From contig CM075989.1 in assembly GCA_038087875.1 (NCBI GenBank), forward strand, positions 11,036,001 to 11,100,000: a DNA stretch of 64,000 nucleotides, given 5' to 3'. Positions 40,134-40,879 of this stretch are shown piece after piece. The translations under genes and the position numbers were made by a program. The notes beneath the pieces were generated by a model. The model worked only from the letters and a program-made list of their open reading frames with translations, did no database searches and was not told the origin of the DNA. Within the stretch, counting starts at the first letter, position 1, and every line of letters starts with the position of its first letter. Source of the stretch: Malacoraja senta. Taxonomy: Eukaryota.

Positions 40134-40384
40134 GGCAGGGCAACGCAGCTTAATGCATTGATCCTGGCTGTGCCGAGAGTGGCAACTGACCCTCTTTCCC
40201 ACTACTTTCAGAGCCTTTGTATCAGCCGAGCCTCGGTAGGATTTTGTTTCTGAGAGTTATTAATTTAAGAGTCATTTCACTTGCACCCAGTGTTACTTCC
40301 AAAGCATTACTGCAGTCGGTATAACGACTGAAGAAGGGTCTCGACCCGAACCGCCGCTCATTCCTTTTCTCCAGAGATGCTGCC

Positions 40385-40415
40385 CAAAGATCATAGAGCG
40401 GCTCTATGATCTTTG
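40385..40415. mobile_element. 31-bp perfect palindromic insertion with an 8-bp TSD (P-element-like footprint or micro-MITE)
   Basis: ATGCTGCC|CAAAGATCATAGAGC G GCTCTATGATCTTTG|ATGCTGCC. Confidence 0.8.
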
Positions 40416-40879
40416 ATGCTGCCTGTCCGGCTGAGTTACTCCAGCGCTTTGTGTCTATTTTCGGTTTAAACCAGCATCTGCAGTTCCCTCCTATACAAGG
40501 AACTGCTGATGTTATCTTAAAAACAAAAGACACAAAGTGCTGGAGTAATTCAGCAGCTTCGGAGTCGGGGTCAGACAGCGTCTCCAGAACATGGATAGGT
40601 GACATTTCGGGTCGGAACCCTTCTGCAATCCGATCAGCCTGGATGTGGTCCCGGAAGAACAGCAAGTGCGTGACTGCAAATAAAAACCTGCAGATGCTGT
40701 AAATCTAAAATAAAAGCAAAATCCTGGAAACACTCAACAGGTCAGGCAATGTCTTTGGTGAGAGAAATAGAGTAAATTTCAGATCAACTTTGCTTTTCTC
40801 AATGATGTCAATATCAACTACACAACTTCTTGCACATGGTCGCATCCCTCTATTCACAGCCTGTTCATGTGTCTGTCTA

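What the first reader, a model, noticed from the sequence alone, without database searches (positions are those of the whole stretch)
40377..40423. P-element-like excision footprint: 31-bp perfect palindrome with an exact 8-bp TSD
Seen: CAAAGATCATAGAGC-G-GCTCTATGATCTTTG sits between two ATGCTGCC copies. Other copies of the host repeat in this window (~36715, ~50700) have a single ATGCTGCC, so the duplication is unambiguous. Established: P-superfamily elements have CANRG termini and 8-bp TSDs, and Drosophila P transposase cuts with 17-nt 3' overhangs, so repaired donor sites keep about 15-17 nt of each TIR. Inference: this is a scar from germline excision of a P-like transposon in a cartilaginous fish. 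It lies in a little-diverged host repeat with no mismatches, so it looks recent. Vertebrate P elements are known mainly as domesticated THAP9 and a few fish relics.
Basis: partly seen in the sequence, partly recalled or inferred. Interest (0 to 1): 0.85.

Follow-up and report, generated by a model that had tools for sequence, protein, structure and literature searches.

The report
Transposon excision scar, P-element type
A 31-base perfect palindrome between two copies of an 8-base target duplication is most likely the scar left when a cut-and-paste transposon jumped out; it looks like the scars Drosophila P elements leave, but the transposon family could not be identified here.

Summary
At 40377-40423 the sequence reads ATGCTGCC, then a 31-bp perfect palindrome (15+1+15), then ATGCTGCC. 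Eight other copies of the host repeat in the window lack exactly these 39 bases.

It is not alone:
- A 36-bp CAAAGAT...ATCTTTG insert with an exact 8-bp duplication lies 287 bp upstream.
- A sister species about 1.5% diverged carries a third, one-armed remnant 45 bp from that insert. It is absent here.

All three lie 270-560 bp upstream of a tRNA-Lys gene, in a CpG-preserved zone. Public read sets of three species hold many similar copies, including 28- and 30-bp junction variants.

The architecture (duplication + about 15-17 nt of each end + duplication, with microhomology variants, a templated filler and a one-armed form) matches published Drosophila P-element donor-site junctions. It does not fit hAT-type cleavage.

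The superfamily remains unproven. No longer element or transposase with these ends is in the window. The CAAAG terminus is not diagnostic. The host repeat is about 9% from consensus, not "little diverged".

The scan noted similar short inserts at about eight other places in this genome, and P-like THAP elements as well. All of those notes are unchecked.

Verdict: a real excision scar, P-type the most likely reading (about 0.6).

The parts
40377..40384 (.). Left copy of the 8-bp target-site duplication, ATGCTGCC
   Evidence: Paralogs have one copy only.
40385..40415 (.). 31-bp perfect palindrome CAAAGATCATAGAGC-G-GCTCTATGATCTTTG. Read as two transposon ends (16+15 nt) joined after excision.
   Evidence: Folds as a 14-bp DNA hairpin at -15.5 kcal/mol, z = -6.3. 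Other genomic copies have 28- and 30-bp versions (table 4).
40416..40423 (.). Right copy of the 8-bp target-site duplication, ATGCTGCC
40328..40470 (+). Host: one copy of a very abundant ~135-bp SINE-like repeat, interrupted by the insert. It is followed by an inverted copy at about 40430-40630.
   Evidence: 9/98 differences from the paralog majority. Contig depth is about 10^5 times single copy in four read sets.
40090..40141 (.). Second scar: GGCAGGGC | 36-bp CAAAGATTACAGAGC-AGAGC-TCCTCTAGTATCTTTG | GGCAGGGC, in single-copy DNA
   Evidence: (exact 8-bp duplication). Present with 0 differences in 583-584-bp contigs of two samples (table 8). Depth over it is hundreds of times single copy in 3 species (table 2).
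40179..40186 (.). Empty site (GTGGCAAC) in this genome. In sister species B the site holds GTGACAGC + TCCTCTAGTATCTTTG + GTGACAAC, a one-armed remnant whose arm is identical to the right arm of the second scar.
   Evidence: table 4 (24 nt put in behind 40178, 1 contig, 22.2 of 22.2 depth in X3; 0 in X1 and X2) and table 3 (40182 G>A in X3).
39752..39825 (-). tRNA-Lys(CTT) gene. The three events lie 273, 353 and 560 bp upstream of it, in a zone of raised CpG o/e (0.55-0.75 against 0.15-0.3 in the flanks).

Best explanation
The 31-bp palindrome is a donor-site repair scar.

Proposed sequence of events:
1. A cut-and-paste DNA transposon with CAAAGAT... ends inserted into the ATGCTGCC site of a SINE-like repeat and duplicated 8 bp (shown by the paralog alignment).
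2. The transposase later excised it by cutting the non-transferred strand about 15-17 nt inside each end, as P-element transposase does. This left single-stranded tails of transposon sequence on the flanks (inferred).
3. End joining fused the two tails as 16+15 nt (inferred).

The 36-bp neighbour is the same kind of product from a related element: 15 nt, a 5-nt templated repeat AGAGC, then 16 nt. The sister-species remnant is a one-armed product.

The element family most likely belongs to the P superfamily (THAP9-like transposase) and prefers open, unmethylated DNA such as the region upstream of a tRNA gene. Both of these points are inferred.
For: 1. A true insertion with an 8-bp target duplication: 8 paralogs lack exactly insert + one copy.
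2. The ends recur. A second insert with an exact 8-bp duplication lies 287 bp away. A third, species-specific remnant has an arm identical to it over 19 nt, and both of its duplicate copies carry species B's own allele.
3. Junctions vary among other genomic copies. Versions lacking 3 nt (28 bp, reading as 13(GC)13 microhomology) or 1 nt (30 bp, 15+15) occur in 5 and 9 contigs in X1, and also in X2, X3 and X7 (table 4). Independent end-joining predicts this; a unit that moves as such does not.
4. The 583-584-bp contigs run through the 36-bp insert without breaking. Its exact 31-mers therefore appear not to be repeated elsewhere, although similar sequence piles up hundreds-fold.
5. Published Drosophila P{wa} junctions have the same architecture: TSD + 14(AT)14, 15(TA)15, 17+17, templated insertions and one-armed forms, arising from 17-nt 3' tails (PMC2895639; PMC7776569).
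6. hAT, MULE and Transib transposases cut through a hairpin on the flanking DNA and release the whole end (PMC5499845). Tol2 scars kept no exact 8-bp duplication (PMC3553969).
7. P elements make 8-bp duplications, hop locally and favour promoters and replication origins.
8. Unchecked notes report P-like THAP elements with 8-bp duplications in this genome.
Against: - No longer element with these ends and no transposase is in the window, so the superfamily rests on scar architecture alone.
- The arm shared by the second scar and the species-B remnant may be 18-19 nt, slightly over the 17 nt of Drosophila P.
- The termini share only CA with Drosophila P and zebrafish Pdre2.
- Three target sites are too few to test any target preference.
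- Two more distant species hold 2-3 of the 4 sampled words of the scar, but the closer relatives do not. The scar may therefore recur at this repeat site, or travel with repeat copies, and need not have been made at this locus.
- Cleavage chemistry is unknown for other superfamilies with 8-bp duplications (Zisupton, Novosib, Merlin).
Confidence: 0.6

Rival explanations
1. It is an excision or gap-repair remnant of a hAT-superfamily element, or of another family with 8-bp duplications (MULE, Zisupton, Novosib, Merlin). After excision, repair copied a few bases of each end from the sister chromatid and then joined them, leaving an extreme internal-deletion derivative.
For: An 8-bp duplication is the hAT hallmark (PMC3553969). 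The CAAAG terminus fits the hAT YARNG rule, which I recall from memory and did not test. hAT is reported in all vertebrate lineages (PMC4350176). The 18-19-nt shared arm exceeds 17 nt. One of three target sites (GTGACAAC) fits nTnnnnAn, also recalled from memory.
Against: hAT, MULE and Transib cleavage releases the complete end and leaves a flank hairpin, so their scars carry altered duplications and no TIR sequence. All three events here keep only 15-19 nt per end. Aborted copying would not be expected to stop this short three times out of three, nor to give the 28/30/31-bp series.
Confidence: 0.2
2. The 31-bp palindrome is itself a minimal mobile element: two bare transposase-recognition ends that a transposase supplied in trans inserts as a unit.
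For: About 40-95 single-copy equivalents of contigs span the palindrome centre in each read set. Another first-reader note reports identical 22-bp hairpins, each with its own duplication (s1-197977, unchecked).
Against: Junction variants of 28 and 30 bp are common among the copies. The 36-bp neighbour's exact 31-mers appear unique. The one-armed remnant in species B cannot be a mobile unit. Drosophila P needs internal transposase-binding sites beyond the 31-bp repeat (PMC7776569, figure 4 legend).
Confidence: 0.08
3. The scar was made once in a master copy of the SINE-like repeat and reached this locus by retrotransposition of that copy. Under this reading nothing was excised at this locus.
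For: Two species that do not detectably hold the unique flanks hold 2-3 of the 4 sampled words that join repeat and palindrome. A 101-bp contig of organism A shows another repeat copy, 9 mismatches away, with an insert at the same place (record 2). The host copy differs from the family majority at 9 positions, which could mark a subfamily.
Against: The closer relatives B-E do not hold the words. Recurrent hits are expected when about 5 x 10^5 copies offer the same target site. This reading still needs an original excision scar, so it changes where the event happened, not what it is.
Confidence: 0.12

Closest known systems
Drosophila melanogaster P-element excision footprints (donor-site end-joining products of 17-nt 3' tails; Beall & Rio 1997 as cited in PMC7776569; junction tables in Chan, Yu & McVey 2010, PMC2895639)
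   Same: Both 8-bp duplication copies are kept. About 14-17 nt of each inverted end is retained, giving a 30-34-bp near-palindrome. The variants are the same kinds: 2-nt microhomology, blunt joins, templated insertions and one-armed products. Events cluster locally in promoter-like, open DNA.
   Different: The host is a cartilaginous fish and the scars are natural, apparently fixed ones rather than laboratory products. The end sequence is unrelated (CAAAGATCATAGAGC against CATGATGAAATAACATA). One arm may be 18-19 nt. No transposase has been linked.
Zebrafish Pdre2 / zfTHAP9 (vertebrate P-like element; PMC10983969)
   Same: A vertebrate element with 8-bp target duplications and short terminal inverted repeats. 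Its transposase can excise.
   Different: The Pdre2 ends (CATACCTGTCAAC) are unrelated. The passages of that preprint that I read describe larger deletions after zfTHAP9 excision and give no TIR-retaining natural scars or cleavage positions. zfTHAP9 did not complete transposition.
hAT elements (Ac/Ds, hobo, Hermes, Tol2)
   Same: 8-bp target duplication, and a terminus of the CA..G type.
   Different: hAT transposases form a hairpin on the flanking DNA. Their scars are altered duplications with no element sequence, or precise reversions (PMC5499845, PMC3553969). Here 15-19 nt of each end remain.

Membership tests
P superfamily (P element / THAP9-like) transposon scar | 8-bp (7-8) target-site duplication | tested here: met
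   Exact ATGCTGCC x2 and GGCAGGGC x2. Paralogs have a single copy.
P superfamily (P element / THAP9-like) transposon scar | Staggered cleavage about 17 nt inside each end, so the donor site keeps up to about 17 nt per end plus filler | tested here: inconclusive
   Arms are 16+15 (31 bp), 15+5 filler+16 (36 bp) and 16-18 (species B). All fit Drosophila's Table 1. The 19 nt shared between two events could mean an arm longer than 17 nt, and three events are too few.
P superfamily (P element / THAP9-like) transposon scar | An autonomous copy with the same termini that encodes THAP + RNase-H-like transposase with a GTP-binding insertion | not testable with these tools
   No longer element with these termini is in the window and no transposase ORF either. 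The rest of the genome could not be read. Unchecked notes of P-like THAP elements exist elsewhere in this genome.
   CAAAG fits, but Drosophila P (CATGA) and Pdre2 (CATAC) do not. The motif is therefore not diagnostic.
hAT superfamily | 8-bp target-site duplication | tested here: met
hAT superfamily | Excision through a flank hairpin, giving scars without element sequence | tested here: not met
   Each scar keeps 15-19 nt of the element ends. The mechanism is from PMC5499845, and Tol2 scars from PMC3553969.
hAT superfamily | Target preference nTnnnnAn (recalled from memory) | tested here: inconclusive
   ATGCTGCC fits at one of the two positions, GGCAGGGC at neither, GTGACAAC at both. Three sites only.

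The most novel reading that the evidence does not exclude
A P-superfamily transposon family was active in skates or sharks after the split of living sister species, and may still be active. It targets open chromatin upstream of tRNA genes and promoters. It has left hundreds to thousands of fixed excision scars, whose arm lengths form a natural record that the unusual ~17-nt staggered cleavage of Drosophila P transposase is conserved in a vertebrate P/THAP9-type enzyme.
Probability: 0.45. Interest if true: 0.65.

Novelty: new member of a known kind. Interest (0 to 1): 0.5.

Why it matters
In vertebrates, P-type transposases are known mainly as domesticated THAP9 genes and as zebrafish relics whose enzyme excises but does not complete transposition (PMC10983969). 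Where vertebrate enzymes of this family cut was not given in the papers I read.

If these scars come from a P-like element, three things follow:
- The family was recently mobile in a cartilaginous fish.
- The arm-length distribution of the scars gives a direct read-out of the cleavage stagger, with no biochemistry needed.
- There is a catalogue of natural germline end-joining products in a slowly evolving vertebrate.

The clustering of three independent events upstream of a tRNA gene also bears on target choice. If the element turns out to be hAT or something else, the scars would point to a cleavage mode not described for that family.

Tried and rejected
- **Longer family members in the window.** I ran exact and fuzzy searches with the 15- to 23-nt arms, and a TIR+TSD scan up to 8 kb. 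Nothing turned up beyond the two short inserts.
- **Transposase ORFs in the window.** The ten longest ORFs gave a rhodopsin-type receptor, LINE reverse transcriptase and satellite-derived false ORFs only.
- **Metagenome scan with the 19-nt arm.** Two hits, both microbial chance matches with no inverted partner.
- **First read-laying run.** That left one call, so the orthologous state of the 31-bp scar in sister species could not be bridged; contigs break inside the repeat.
- **Original cleavage papers.** Beall & Rio 1997 and Staveley 1995 are not held. I used the review (PMC7776569) and the junction tables of PMC2895639 instead.
- **Literature on P elements in cartilaginous fishes.** Nothing specific was found.
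- **Notes search.** Searching by terminus word (CAAAGAT, CAAAG) gave only the neighbour's note, or nothing.
- **Readings rejected.** Chance palindrome. Assembly artefact, since two samples hold it. P-nucleotide palindrome from hairpin opening, since the palindrome is unrelated to the flanks.
- **Seeding a P-transposase search.** Not possible: no tool-given P-type protein was available and I did not type one from memory.

Full report
**1. Observation**

The window reads ...CTCCAGAG ATGCTGCC CAAAGATCATAGAGC G GCTCTATGATCTTTG ATGCTGCC TGTCCGG... at 40377-40423. The insert is a 31-bp perfect palindrome with 15-nt arms and one central base. Both flanking octamers are identical.

The host is one copy (about 40328-40470) of a very abundant ~135-bp SINE-like repeat. 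BLAST of the reconstructed empty copy found about 15 other copies in the window. An alignment with eight of them shows one clean 39-column gap, equal to the insert plus one octamer; every paralog has a single GATGCTGCC-like site.

A scan of the whole window for 12-60-bp palindromic inserts between exact 8-bp repeats returned only this insert and hits inside a 21-bp satellite. Ten Markov-shuffled windows gave 0 or 1 hit.

Contigs of two different samples of the same species hold all four sampled 31-mers across it, so it is not an assembly artefact.

**2. It is not alone**

- **Second insert.** Pairing every CAAAGAT with every ATCTTTG and asking for an 8-bp duplication gave a second case 287 bp upstream, in single-copy DNA: GGCAGGGC | CAAAGATTACAGAGCAGAGCTCCTCTAGTATCTTTG (36 bp, 40098-40133) | GGCAGGGC. 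Contigs of 583-584 bp from two samples cover 39900-40382 with no difference (table 8), so both samples carry it.
- **Third event, in a sister species.** A contig of organism B differs from the window at about 5 of 330 unique positions. It carries 24 extra bases after 40178, so that B reads GTGACAGC TCCTCTAGTATCTTTG GTGACAAC where this genome reads GTGGCAAC (tables 3 and 4). The 19 bases AGCTCCTCTAGTATCTTTG are identical to the right arm of the 36-bp insert. Both duplicate copies carry B's own allele (A at the fourth base). This is therefore a third, independent, one-armed event made in B's lineage after the species split.
- **Location.** All three events lie 273, 353 and 560 bp upstream of a tRNA-Lys(CTT) gene (39752-39825, minus strand). 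The zone has CpG observed/expected of 0.55-0.75, against 0.15-0.3 in the flanks. That is the signature of DNA kept unmethylated in the germ line.

**3. A multi-copy family with variable junctions**

- Summed contig depth over the 36-bp insert is hundreds of times the single-copy depth in all four read sets, which cover three species. One example is 1089 against 5.2 in X1 (table 2).
- Across the centre of the 31-bp palindrome the depth is roughly 40-95 single-copy equivalents. Part of that depth comes from contigs that lack 3 bases at 40398 (5 contigs in X1, 7 in X7) or 1 base at 40400 (9 contigs in X1) (table 4).
- Those variants are 28 bp, which reads as 13(GC)13, a 2-nt microhomology join, and 30 bp (15+15). 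The window's copy is 16+15.
- The long contigs pass through the 36-bp insert unbroken. With 31-mer graphs, this implies that its exact core is not repeated elsewhere, although similar sequence is. This is an inference, with the caveat that contig simplification can hide branches.
- Variable junctions on constant ends are what independent end-joining events give. They are not what a unit that moves as such gives.

**4. Mechanism**

Drosophila P transposase cuts the 3' strand at the element end and the other strand 17 nt inside. The flanks therefore keep 17-nt non-complementary 3' tails (PMC7776569; PMC10983969; PMC2895639).

Table 1 of PMC2895639 lists the sequenced germline junctions:
- TSD + CATGATGAAATAAC(AT)GTTATTTCATCATG + TSD (30 bp, 14 isolates)
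- 15(TA)15 (32 bp)
- blunt 17+17
- junctions with templated insertions of up to about 15 nt
- one-armed products

Every form seen here has a counterpart in that table:
- 31 bp: a 16+15 blunt join
- 28 bp: a 13(GC)13 join
- 30 bp: a 15+15 join
- 36 bp: 15 nt + a tandem copy of AGAGC + 16 nt, a templated filler
- species B: a one-armed product

hAT, MULE and Transib transposases instead make a hairpin on the flanking DNA and release the whole end (PMC5499845). In 76 sequenced Tol2 excision clones, no scar kept an exact 8-bp duplication (PMC3553969).

I therefore read the feature as a P-type excision scar. What is shown: a true insertion with an 8-bp duplication, recurrence of the ends, junction heterogeneity, and a species-specific event. 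What is inferred: the staggered cut, the end joining, and the superfamily.

**5. Limits**

- **No parent element.** The window holds no longer element with these ends and no transposase. The tools could not read the rest of this genome, and a metagenome scan gave only chance hits.
- **The terminus is not diagnostic.**
- **Arm length.** The shared 19-nt arm may exceed 17 nt. A few copied bases before joining could explain that, or a different stagger.
- **Host divergence and age.** The host copy is 9/98 from the paralog majority, at the same nine positions where the genome-wide contig majority differs (table 3). 'Little-diverged host' is therefore wrong. Zero differences in 23 paired positions only bounds the scar to under about 6.5% divergence, though it is younger than the repeat copy if those nine differences are substitutions (P about 0.015).
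- **Where the scar was made.** Organisms F and G hold 3 and 2 of the 4 sampled words of the scar, while the closer relatives B-E are not listed as holders. A second repeat copy in organism A has an insert at the same place (record 2). Either the same repeat site was hit repeatedly, which is plausible with about 5 x 10^5 copies of the target, or a scarred repeat copy was itself amplified. In the second case the excision did not happen at this locus.

**6. Comparison, novelty and earlier notes**

The scar works like a Drosophila P-element footprint. Membership in the P superfamily is met for the 8-bp duplication, inconclusive for the stagger, and untestable here for the transposase. hAT membership fails on scar architecture.

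First-stage notes from other parts of this genome describe the same kind of short insert with 8-bp duplications: 12-46, 22, 23, 28, 34 and 36-37 bp (s1-187576, s1-197977, s1-200032, s1-187652, s1-140271, s1-140411, s1-193224). Other notes describe P-like elements with THAP domains (s1-191409, s1-140616, s1-213394, s1-187657). All are unchecked AI notes. They are leads that fit this reading, not support for it.

I found no paper on P elements or their scars in cartilaginous fishes.

**Verdict:** a real excision scar and a new member of a known kind. The P-type reading has a probability of about 0.6.

Noticed in passing
window 39400-40600: CpG observed/expected is 0.55-0.75 around the tRNA-Lys(CTT) gene, against 0.15-0.3 in the flanks. 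This is probably a germline-unmethylated island at an active Pol III gene. All three transposon scars fall inside it.
   Followed up: partly
window 40312 (organism B, run X3): Sister species B has 24 extra bases (TAGTCTGGGAGTAACAGACGTGAT) after 40312, just upstream of the SINE-like repeat. They are not palindromic and have no CAAAGAT end. The nature of this indel is unexplained.
   Followed up: no
window 40328-40630: The host repeat forms an inverted pair with a second copy (about 40430-40630, minus strand). Other copies in the window also sit as inverted pairs (for example 50501-50636 with 50653-50750, and 62691-62780 with 62784-62913). Contig depth indicates about 10^5-10^6 copies per genome in three species.
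   Followed up: partly
window 60795-61957: A 21-bp satellite (GGCCAGTGGTTGTAGTAAACT, 55 copies, 89% matches). It creates long false ORFs in several frames, with spurious Pfam hits.
   Followed up: yes
window 48833-49945 (-): An intronless 370-aa ORF with a full-length rhodopsin-family 7TM domain (Pfam 7tm_1, E = 8e-57). It is probably a G-protein-coupled receptor gene. A CpG-rich stretch (GC 0.58, o/e 0.74-0.86) lies at about 43200-43800.
   Followed up: partly
window 15291-16504 (+): Two adjacent ORFs carry the halves of a reverse-transcriptase domain (RVT_1). This is a frame-shifted LINE or retroelement remnant.
   Followed up: partly
The operators may wish to warn about conserved tRNA genes.
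   Followed up: no
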